From Pecten maximus (Eukaryota): a DNA stretch of 64,000 nt. The notes beneath the pieces were generated by a model. It was not told the origin of the DNA, ran no database searches, and worked only from the letters and a program-made list of their open reading frames with translations. Location of the stretch: NCBI RefSeq assembly GCF_902652985.1, contig NC_047021.1:28334001-28398000 (forward strand), in the 5' to 3' direction. Made by a program: the position numbers and the translations under genes. Below, piece after piece: positions 45,851-46,533 of the stretch (positions within the stretch are counted from its first letter, which is position 1; each line of letters opens with the position of its first letter).

Positions 45851-46335
45851 GGCCACTTTCCAATTCAGCGCCACCTGGCGGATCATAATCCAAGATGGCG
45901 GCGTATGGTGTGTCCGTGTCACAGCACATGTTTTTAGTGTTTTATCAGCGCTACGCGTCAAATTAGACTTTTTCCAGAAAATCTTCGTGCTTAAATGCGT
46001 ATATAGGTAAGTAAGTCTTTATTTTGGAATGATTTTATAAGGAAATAAGGCGATATAAGACCGATATACACTTGTTCAAATACCCCAGGTGAGAAACCCT
46101 GCAGAATGCTATGTAACTCATTTACACAGGTGTAGCATTAAAAATCGGTCATTGTATGATTCACGATTCATTTATTAGTTCTTGATTTGTATAGATCGAA
46201 TAGAATCAGTCACTGCTTATGAAATGACGGCATCATAACGATGATAGCGAAATAAATAACGATATATCCATAAATACTATTTGCACCAGGTAACATTACA
46301 GGTAAGTTTGAAAGGTGTTTTGAATGCCGCCATTT
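45851..46335 (+). repeat. Left TIR (485 bp)
   Basis: GGCCACTTTCCAATTCAGCGCCACC...GAATGCCGCCATTT; looser similarity to the right end continues about 40 bp further inward. Confidence 0.95.
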
Positions 46336-46533
46336 AGCCTATACTATTTTTAGAGCAGGTGAAGTCACGTGATCTATCTAGGATAGTGATCTTCCATTGA
46401 TTCATTGTATTTTCTATTTCATGTCACCTGACATTCGTATTTAAATAAATATTACAAAAAGTACTGGTATAGGCCTAGTGGTTTAAAAACATATTATGAA
46501 AACAAACTTTGATTTATATTTTTCAGATACAAA

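What the first reader, a model, noticed from the sequence alone, without database searches (positions are those of the whole stretch)
45851..46533. TIRs appear to double as mirrored promoter and first-exon cassettes driving both genes inward
Seen: each TIR has a CpG-rich head with CAAGATGGCGGC (YY1-like) and a strong donor TATAG|GTAAGT (GT at 46007, mirrored at 60442), plus a second CAG|GTAAGT near 46301. Both ORFs start just after an AG acceptor (46526 for the transposase, 51024 on the minus strand for YqaJ). Inference: the same non-coding exon is spliced to the transposase through a 0.5-kb intron and to the exonuclease through a ~9.4-kb intron. That would give matched expression from identical promoters and explain both the long TIRs and the tolerance of cargo.
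Basis: partly seen in the sequence, partly recalled or inferred. Interest (0 to 1): 0.8.

Follow-up and report, generated by a model that had tools for sequence, protein, structure and literature searches.

The report
Transposon ends supply shared first exon
A young two-gene jumping gene (ISL2EU type) in what is probably a bivalve genome carries the same non-coding first exon in each of its long inverted ends, and public RNA assemblies show it spliced to the transposase on one side and the nuclease gene on the other; maize MuDR has a similar layout, but I found none described for this transposon group.

Summary

- **The element.** It is an ISL2EU transposon. It encodes a THAP-HTH-DDE transposase and a PHD-YqaJ nuclease, transcribed towards each other, and sits in an AATT target. 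Its terminal inverted repeats (TIRs) are 489 nt long and 100% identical.
- **The splicing.** RNA-assembly contigs from four studies, laid on a canonical copy, carry both predicted junctions. The outer 160 nt of the TIR join the acceptor 7 nt before the transposase ATG (window 46006^46527). The mirrored exon joins the acceptor 19 nt before the YqaJ ATG (window 60443^51023). Both introns are GT-AG, and they are covered far less deeply than the exons.
- **Corrections.** The right intron is 1,119 nt in the roughly 10 canonical 6.46-kb copies. The window's 9.4 kb arises because two young multi-copy repeats, one nested in the other, inserted 139 nt upstream of the acceptor. So the "cargo" is not cargo, and "tolerance of cargo" is not supported.
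- **Still open.** A promoter inside the TIR is inferred, not shown. Contigs cannot give transcript starts. The exon-1 contigs reach the element's last base, and one runs 16 letters beyond it.

The closest known layout is maize MuDR. I rate this a new variant of a known kind. Other notes of this scan describe ISL2EU elements elsewhere in this genome, but none describes this feature.

The parts
45847..46335 (+). Left terminal inverted repeat, counted with the AATT target letters. By the ISL2EU convention A|AT|T, the element proper starts at 45850.
   Evidence: 489 nt, 100% complementary to 60114-60602; all 10 copies begin AATTGGCCAC and end GTGGCCAATT.
45850..46006 (+). Non-coding exon 1 on the left. 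Its 3' end is fixed at 46006. Its 5' end is unresolved and lies at or near the element terminus.
   Evidence: the X1 contig joins the 160 nt of TIR (L001 6505-6664, which equals the left arm 201-360) to L001 883. Exon-1 contigs reach the terminus in X1, X2 and X3.
45892..45902 (+). YY1-like motif AAGATGGCGGC. Its ATG opens a 23-codon upstream ORF (45895-45966).
   Evidence: 2 matches against 0.01 expected; translation of the upstream ORF. Function not tested.
46007..46526 (+). Intron of 520 nt in the window copy (522 nt in L001), GT..AG, between exon 1 and the transposase exon.
   Evidence: junction 883<->6505. The intron is uncovered in X1, X3 and X10.
46534..48027 (+). Transposase coding sequence, 497 aa, with THAP, HTH_Tnp_4 and DDE_Tnp_4 domains. 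Its exon starts at 46527.
   Evidence: E-values 8e-18, 3e-13 and 6e-41; seven copies 100% identical.
49286..51004 (-). Coding sequence of the PHD / SWIM-like / YqaJ exonuclease protein, 572 aa. Its exon starts at 51023.
   Evidence: YqaJ 1.7e-11, PHD 5e-10; acceptor and ATG; other copies 99-100% identical.
51024..60442 (-). Right intron. It is 9,419 nt in this copy and 1,119 nt in canonical copies.
   Evidence: skip of 1,119 nt with CT..AC ends in X2, X3 and X10; alignment to the canonical copy L001.
51163..59454 (.). Nested insertion of 8,292 bp found in this copy but in none of the 8 canonical-length copies (the 9.4-kb copy L009 carries a different insertion). Repeat A (51163-52390 plus 57314-59454, about 3.37 kb) is itself interrupted by repeat B (about 52383-57317, about 4.93 kb).
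   Evidence: absent from L001. A is contiguous at 10 or more other places, B is present at 15 or more, all at 96-100% identity.
60443..60599 (-). Non-coding exon 1 on the right, the mirror image of the left one.
60114..60602 (-). Right terminal inverted repeat.

Best explanation
This is a recently active ISL2EU (PHIS superfamily) DNA transposon. Each of its long TIRs carries a non-coding leader exon (the outer 160 nt or so, CpG-rich, with a YY1-like box) that ends in a strong splice donor. Transcripts that include the left TIR splice this leader to an acceptor 7 nt before the transposase ATG. Transcripts that include the right TIR splice the identical leader to an acceptor 19 nt before the ATG of the PHD-YqaJ nuclease gene, so the two genes are read inward towards each other. 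This much is shown by RNA contigs. It is inferred that the promoter for both genes also lies in or at the TIR. That would let every copy express both proteins from identical control sequence wherever it lands, and the promoter and leader would travel with the sequences the transposase needs. In the window's copy, the right intron has been enlarged from 1.1 kb to 9.4 kb by two nested repeat insertions. Whether this particular copy still makes YqaJ mRNA is unknown.
For: **Family.**
- The domains match ISL2EU.
- AATT flanks all 10 copies, as described for ISL2EU in PMC4482050 and PMC4122938.

**Splicing.**
- The X1 contig, from a run recorded as RNA, holds 160 nt of TIR joined to the transposase acceptor.
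- X2, X3 and X10 contigs join the YqaJ acceptor to the TIR donor by skipping 1,119 nt with GT-AG ends.
- X3 contig 19 has both junctions.
- Exons are covered far more deeply than the right intron: X3 67 against 0-5, X10 12-24 against 0-1, X2 124 against 15, X1 29 against 5-7.
- No genomic copy lacks the intron.

**Comparison with relatives.**
- A sister family (57% amino-acid identity) also has long TIRs of about 290 nt.
- It has GTAAGT in both arms at arm positions 139 and 172, and a pyrimidine tract plus AG 8 nt before its YqaJ ATG.

**Signs of a promoter.**
- CpG observed/expected is 1.27 in exon 1 against 0.44 in the coding sequence.
- The YY1-like motif occurs only in the two TIRs.
- About 8 independent insertion sites share the same exon 1.
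Against: - All RNA evidence comes from assembled contigs, which cannot show transcript starts, strand or level.
- Exon-1 contigs run to the very last base of the element. One (X1) continues 16 letters beyond it. Some transcripts may therefore start in flanking DNA, or the contig was extended by read-through RNA or contaminating DNA.
- X2, X3 and X10 are RNA only by the tool's guess, although their exon/intron depth contrast and small size fit RNA.
- Reads cannot be assigned to one copy, so nothing shows that the window's own copy is expressed.
- The YqaJ junction lies in a 10-nt direct repeat (TATATAGGTA). Its exact position is fixed only by the GT-AG rule.
- Identity between the arms extends 329 nt past the donor, which a promoter plus leader does not explain.
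Confidence: 0.75

Rival explanations
1. The TIR exon is real, but transcription starts outside the element. Host transcription reading into a copy is captured by the TIR donor, so the TIR acts as a splice cassette and not as a promoter.
For:: exon-1 contigs cover the TIR to its last base in X1, X2 and X3. The X1 contig has 16 further letters beyond the end, and the X3 contig stops exactly at the element boundary, as a graph assembly does where flanks diverge.
Against: - About 8 independent insertion sites with unrelated flanks would all need upstream host promoters on both sides.
- Exon-1 depth is close to that of the gene body in all four studies.
- The TIR head is CpG-rich and carries a YY1-like box.
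- An internal promoter that starts transcription at the element's first base is known for L1 (PMC11602158) and would give the same contigs.
Confidence: 0.2
2. The junctions are artefacts, not splicing in the cell: reverse-transcriptase template switching, assembly chimeras at short repeats, or processed DNA copies.
For: - The YqaJ junction sits in a 10-nt direct repeat ('both' = 10).
- Identical inverted repeats confuse graph assemblers.
- Three of the four runs are RNA only by guess.
Against: - Both junctions fit GT-AG with a pyrimidine tract.
- The transposase junction has only 2 ambiguous letters.
- The same junctions were seen in four studies.
- The spliced path is the high-depth one, and the intron is nearly or wholly uncovered in X3 and X10.
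- All TIR matches found in the assembly belong to copies that keep the intron.
Confidence: 0.04

Closest known systems
ISL2EU group of the PHIS (PIF/Harbinger-ISL2EU-Spy) superfamily of DNA transposons (PMC4482050, PMC4122938)
   Same: - THAP-HTH-DDE transposase.
- A second gene with a YqaJ exonuclease domain.
- A|AT|T target.
- Presence in invertebrates.
   Different: - The TIRs are 489 nt, against 6-259 bp in the 25 families of PMC4482050.
- Other ISL2EU families in this same genome have TIRs of 31-51 bp.
- PMC4482050 contains neither the word 'promoter' nor 'intron'. PMC4122938 was searched only for the family and domain names.
Maize MuDR (Mutator superfamily): mudrA and mudrB transcribed convergently from promoters in the ~215-bp TIRs (PMC3440606)
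   Same: - Two genes read inward from near-identical long TIRs.
- Read-through between the convergent genes produces antisense RNA.
   Different: - It has an unrelated transposase (MULE against DDE_Tnp_4), in a plant rather than an animal.
- In MuDR, transcription starts near +165 or just inside the TIR, and (from my knowledge, not checked here) there is no shared spliced leader.
- Here the outer 160 nt are an exon with its own donor. The promoter is inferred, not assayed.
Human L1 5'UTR internal promoter, where a YY1 site near the 5' end sets the start of transcription (PMC11602158)
   Same: A YY1-type motif lies close to the element's end, and RNA covers the element up to or near its first base.
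   Different: - L1 is a retrotransposon.
- Here the motif lies at +46 to +56, not at about +13 to +21 (that position is from my memory).
- Neither YY1 binding nor the start site was tested.
En/Spm (CACTA): one promoter and a non-coding first exon, with alternative splicing giving two proteins (from my knowledge; no paper read here)
   Same: A shared non-coding leader exon serves two transposon proteins.
   Different: En/Spm has one promoter and one strand. Here the cassette is duplicated in mirror image, and each copy serves one gene.

Membership tests
ISL2EU (PHIS superfamily) | Transposase with THAP, HTH and DDE (DDE_Tnp_4) domains | tested here: met
   THAP 8.2e-18, HTH_Tnp_4 3.2e-13, DDE_Tnp_4 5.8e-41.
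ISL2EU (PHIS superfamily) | Second ORF with a YqaJ exonuclease domain | tested here: met
   YqaJ 1.7e-11 (22-bit cut-off passed with 45.1), plus a PHD finger.
ISL2EU (PHIS superfamily) | AT target-site duplication within an A|AT|T target | tested here: met
   all 10 copies are flanked by AATT on both sides, with unrelated sequence beyond. I did not examine an empty site, so a 2-bp AT duplication cannot be told from a 4-bp AATT one.
ISL2EU (PHIS superfamily) | Terminal inverted repeats (6-259 bp in described families) | tested here: met
   TIRs are present but 489 nt long, beyond the published range.
MuDR-type expression layout (works like; not a member) | Two genes transcribed convergently, each next to one TIR | tested here: met
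MuDR-type expression layout (works like; not a member) | Promoter and transcription start inside the TIR | tested here: inconclusive
Mutator superfamily | MULE/MURA-type transposase | tested here: not met
   the only transposase domain found is DDE_Tnp_4.
YY1-positioned internal promoter (L1-like) | YY1 core motif near the 5' end | tested here: met
   AAGATGGCGGC occurs once in each TIR, against 0.01 expected.
YY1-positioned internal promoter (L1-like) | YY1 binding, and start-site choice that depends on the motif | not testable with these tools
   This needs ChIP or EMSA, and reporter constructs with the motif removed.

The most novel reading that the evidence does not exclude
The long TIRs of this ISL2EU lineage are self-contained, mirror-image expression cassettes. 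Each would hold an internal, YY1-positioned promoter that starts transcription at or within a few bases of the element's end, a leader exon with an upstream ORF, and a donor. As a by-product, read-through across the convergent genes would make a 489-bp TIR hairpin RNA that is A-to-I hyper-edited, giving the host or the element a built-in brake.
Probability: 0.3. Interest if true: 0.65.

Novelty: new variant of a known kind. Interest (0 to 1): 0.5.

Why it matters
The two ISL2EU surveys I consulted catalogue these elements by sequence features; I saw nothing there on how their two genes are expressed. Here, public RNA data show a compact arrangement: the ends needed for transposition also carry the 5' exon, and probably the promoter, for both genes. 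That would explain why this lineage has the longest ISL2EU TIRs I found described. It gives an animal counterpart to maize MuDR. It also provides exact exon boundaries for anyone who wants to test the element, or its TIR as a portable bidirectional-inward promoter in bivalves. Finally, it corrects the reading of the window's 9 kb of "cargo".

Tried and rejected
- **Cargo.** Rejected. Alignment to canonical copies and the genome-wide copies of the inserted DNA show two nested repeats.
- **Second donor at 46302.** None of the four runs shows a junction there. The site varies between copies: G or T at arm position 460, which gives GTAATT in several left arms.
- **Generality.** I surveyed 13 other loci that pair a transposase with a YqaJ gene. 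Most have TIRs of 31-51 bp or none detectable. At least one locus examined (L018), and two more by coordinates alone, have the genes diverging. The layout is therefore specific to this lineage. Only the 57%-identity sister family shares it.
- **A third relative.** The copy at C13 (71% identity in the transposase) proved to be a fragment without TIRs.
- **Closed or exhausted tools.**
  - Read laying and the look-up of sequencing runs are capped at one call each.
- **Spliced model.** I did not build or search a joined exon-1-plus-exon-2 sequence. Both coding sequences lie in single exons, so nothing was lost.
- **Big protein searches.** Not used, because the family scans left no question open.

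Full report
**1. What is there**

The window holds a 14.75-kb element bounded by 489-nt, 100% identical inverted repeats, at 45847-46335 and 60114-60602. Two intact genes face each other inside it.
- At 46534-48027 (+) lies a 497-aa protein with THAP, HTH_Tnp_4 and DDE_Tnp_4 domains.
- At 51004-49286 (-) lies a 572-aa protein with a PHD finger, a SWIM-like Cys/His motif and a YqaJ exonuclease domain.

This is the gene content published for ISL2EU transposons of the PHIS superfamily, which insert into A|AT|T (PMC4482050 and PMC4122938). All ten copies I fetched begin AATTGGCCAC and end GTGGCCAATT, with unrelated flanks.

The genome is 918 Mb in 3,983 contigs. From memory, those figures match the king scallop assembly. 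I did not verify the organism, and the run labels are coded.

**2. The observation**

- The YY1-like AAGATGGCGGC occurs only in the two TIRs, against 0.01 matches expected.
- TATATAG|GTAAGT has its GT at 46007, mirrored at 60442.
- CAG|GTAAGT lies at 46302.
- Pyrimidine tracts plus AG end at 46526, 7 nt before the transposase ATG, and at 51024 on the minus strand, 19 nt before the YqaJ ATG.
- The outer 160 nt have CpG observed/expected 1.27, against 0.44 in the transposase coding sequence and 0.81 in the window.

**3. The family and the "cargo"**

The genome holds about ten copies that are 98.5-99.8% identical. Seven of them have a transposase 100% identical to the window's.
- Eight of the other copies are 6.38-6.47 kb long.
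- Two pairs (L005/L007 and L008/L009) share flanks. They are local duplications, which leaves about eight independent insertions.

The window copy aligns to the canonical copy L001 over 45847-51162 and 59455-60602. Between these stretches lie 8,292 extra bases.
- Repeat A is about 3.37 kb (window 51163-52390 plus 57314-59454). It is contiguous at ten or more other places.
- Repeat B is about 4.93 kb (about 52383-57317) and interrupts A. It is present at fifteen or more places.
- Both match their other copies at 96-100% identity.

The "cargo" is therefore two young nested insertions private to this copy. It is neither old nor carried by the family. The insertion lies 139 nt upstream of the YqaJ acceptor and leaves that acceptor intact.

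**4. RNA evidence**

Twenty public runs from seven studies hold most words of the element, and four of them are recorded as RNA. I laid four runs from four studies on the canonical copy, L001:665-6664. Because the TIRs are identical, a left-side junction appears there as an "opposite strands" joint to the right TIR.

- **Transposase junction.** X1, RNA on record, has a 4,886-nt contig. Its letters 17-176 are the outer 160 nt of the TIR, and it continues at L001 883, the first base after the transposase acceptor. This is window 46006^46527. X3 and X10 contigs end with 28 letters of the same exon joined at 881/883.
- **YqaJ junction.** X2, X3 and X10 contigs skip 1,119 nt. The ends read CT..AC on the + strand, which is GT..AG on the minus strand, when the cut is moved +3. 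This joins L001 6505 to 5385. In the window it is 60443^51023, once the nested insertion is allowed for.
- **Both at once.** X3 contig 19 carries both junctions at its two ends.
- **Depth.** Exon contigs are deeper than contigs in the right intron: 67 against 0-5 in X3, 12-24 against 0-1 in X10, 124 against 15 in X2, and 29 against 5-7 in X1. This is the pattern of spliced RNA, not DNA.
- **No processed DNA copy.** All TIR matches found in the assembly belong to copies that keep the intron.

The YqaJ junction falls in a 10-nt direct repeat, TATATAGGTA. Its exact position therefore rests on the GT-AG rule.

**5. What is not shown**

- Contigs give no transcript starts, strand or level.
- Exon-1 contigs reach the element's last base in X1, X2 and X3. 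The X3 contig stops exactly there, and the X1 contig has 16 more letters that I could not read.
- This fits either an internal promoter that starts at or near the first base, as YY1 does for human L1 (PMC11602158), or transcription entering from flanking DNA.
- Eight unrelated insertion sites, exon-1 depth close to that of the gene body, and the CpG-rich, motif-bearing head favour a promoter in the TIR. I put that at about 0.65.
- Matched expression of the two genes is untested.
- Nothing assigns any RNA to the window's own copy.

**6. Comparative support and limits**

- Thirteen other transposase-plus-YqaJ loci in this genome mostly have TIRs of 31-51 bp or none detectable. At least one locus examined (L018), and two more by coordinates alone, have the two genes diverging.
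- The one sister family examined (57% amino-acid identity; L021 plus L034) shares the layout:
  - TIRs of about 290 nt;
  - similar termini (AATTGACCTATTTCC...);
  - GTAAGT in both arms, at arm positions 139 and 172;
  - a pyrimidine tract plus AG 8 nt before its YqaJ ATG.
- The cassette is therefore conserved within this lineage but is not general to ISL2EU.

**7. Comparison with what is known**

- The element is an ordinary member of ISL2EU by every defining feature tested. Its TIRs exceed the published 6-259 bp range.
- Its mode of expression works like maize MuDR, whose ~215-bp TIRs hold the promoters of two convergent genes (PMC3440606). The transposase is unrelated.
- Here the TIR also carries a spliced, shared leader exon.
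- PMC4482050 contains neither the word "promoter" nor "intron". A search combining TIRs, transposase, leader exon and promoter returned nothing.

**8. Verdict**

- The core inference, mirrored first-exon cassettes spliced to both genes, is confirmed.
- The promoter is probable but unproven.
- The 9.4-kb intron and the cargo tolerance are rejected as properties of the family.
- This is a new variant of a known kind, of moderate interest.

Noticed in passing
window 46253-46303 and its mirror 60146-60196 (L001 6208-6258): One X2 contig, an unspliced form running from the inner TIR into the left intron, shows 10 A>G changes within 51 nt. None of the 20 genomic TIR arms carries any of them. This looks like A-to-I hyper-editing of double-stranded RNA formed by the two TIRs in read-through transcripts. 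A divergent allele in that animal is not excluded, and the strand cannot be assigned.
   Followed up: partly
window 51163-59454: Two nested multi-copy repeats with no ORF over about 100 aa. Repeat A is about 3.37 kb with an internal 150-nt inverted repeat. Repeat B is about 4.93 kb. Both occur at ten or more other places at 96-100% identity, so both moved recently. I did not classify them.
   Followed up: partly
window 45895-45966 and its mirror in the right TIR: The ATG inside the YY1-like box opens a 23-codon upstream ORF that ends within exon 1. If transcripts start upstream of it, it could damp translation of both genes.
   Followed up: no
window 45868-45881 and its mirror: GCGCCACCTGGCGG is a near-palindrome with a CACCTG E-box. 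From memory it resembles the CTCF core motif. It could equally be the binding site of the THAP transposase. Not tested.
   Followed up: no
window 46000-46009 and 51030-51021 (-): The same 10 letters, TATATAGGTA, span the TIR donor and the YqaJ acceptor. This makes the junction position ambiguous over 10 nt.
   Followed up: no
G000 C4:32475628-32477786, C1:11237642-11239671, C2834:532-2588: Some ISL2EU families of this genome have the transposase and YqaJ genes diverging instead of converging, and the one checked (L018, C4) has short TIRs (51 bp). These cannot use a TIR-driven inward layout.
   Followed up: partly
L005/L007 (C6, 28 kb apart) and L008/L009 (C17, about 50 kb apart): Pairs of copies have identical flanks on both sides. 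They are local segmental duplications, or assembly duplicates, and not separate insertions.
   Followed up: no
window 22001-24000 and 40001-42000: Composition outliers: GC 0.435 with AT skew -0.24 in the first stretch, and GC skew -0.27 in the second. Not examined.
   Followed up: no
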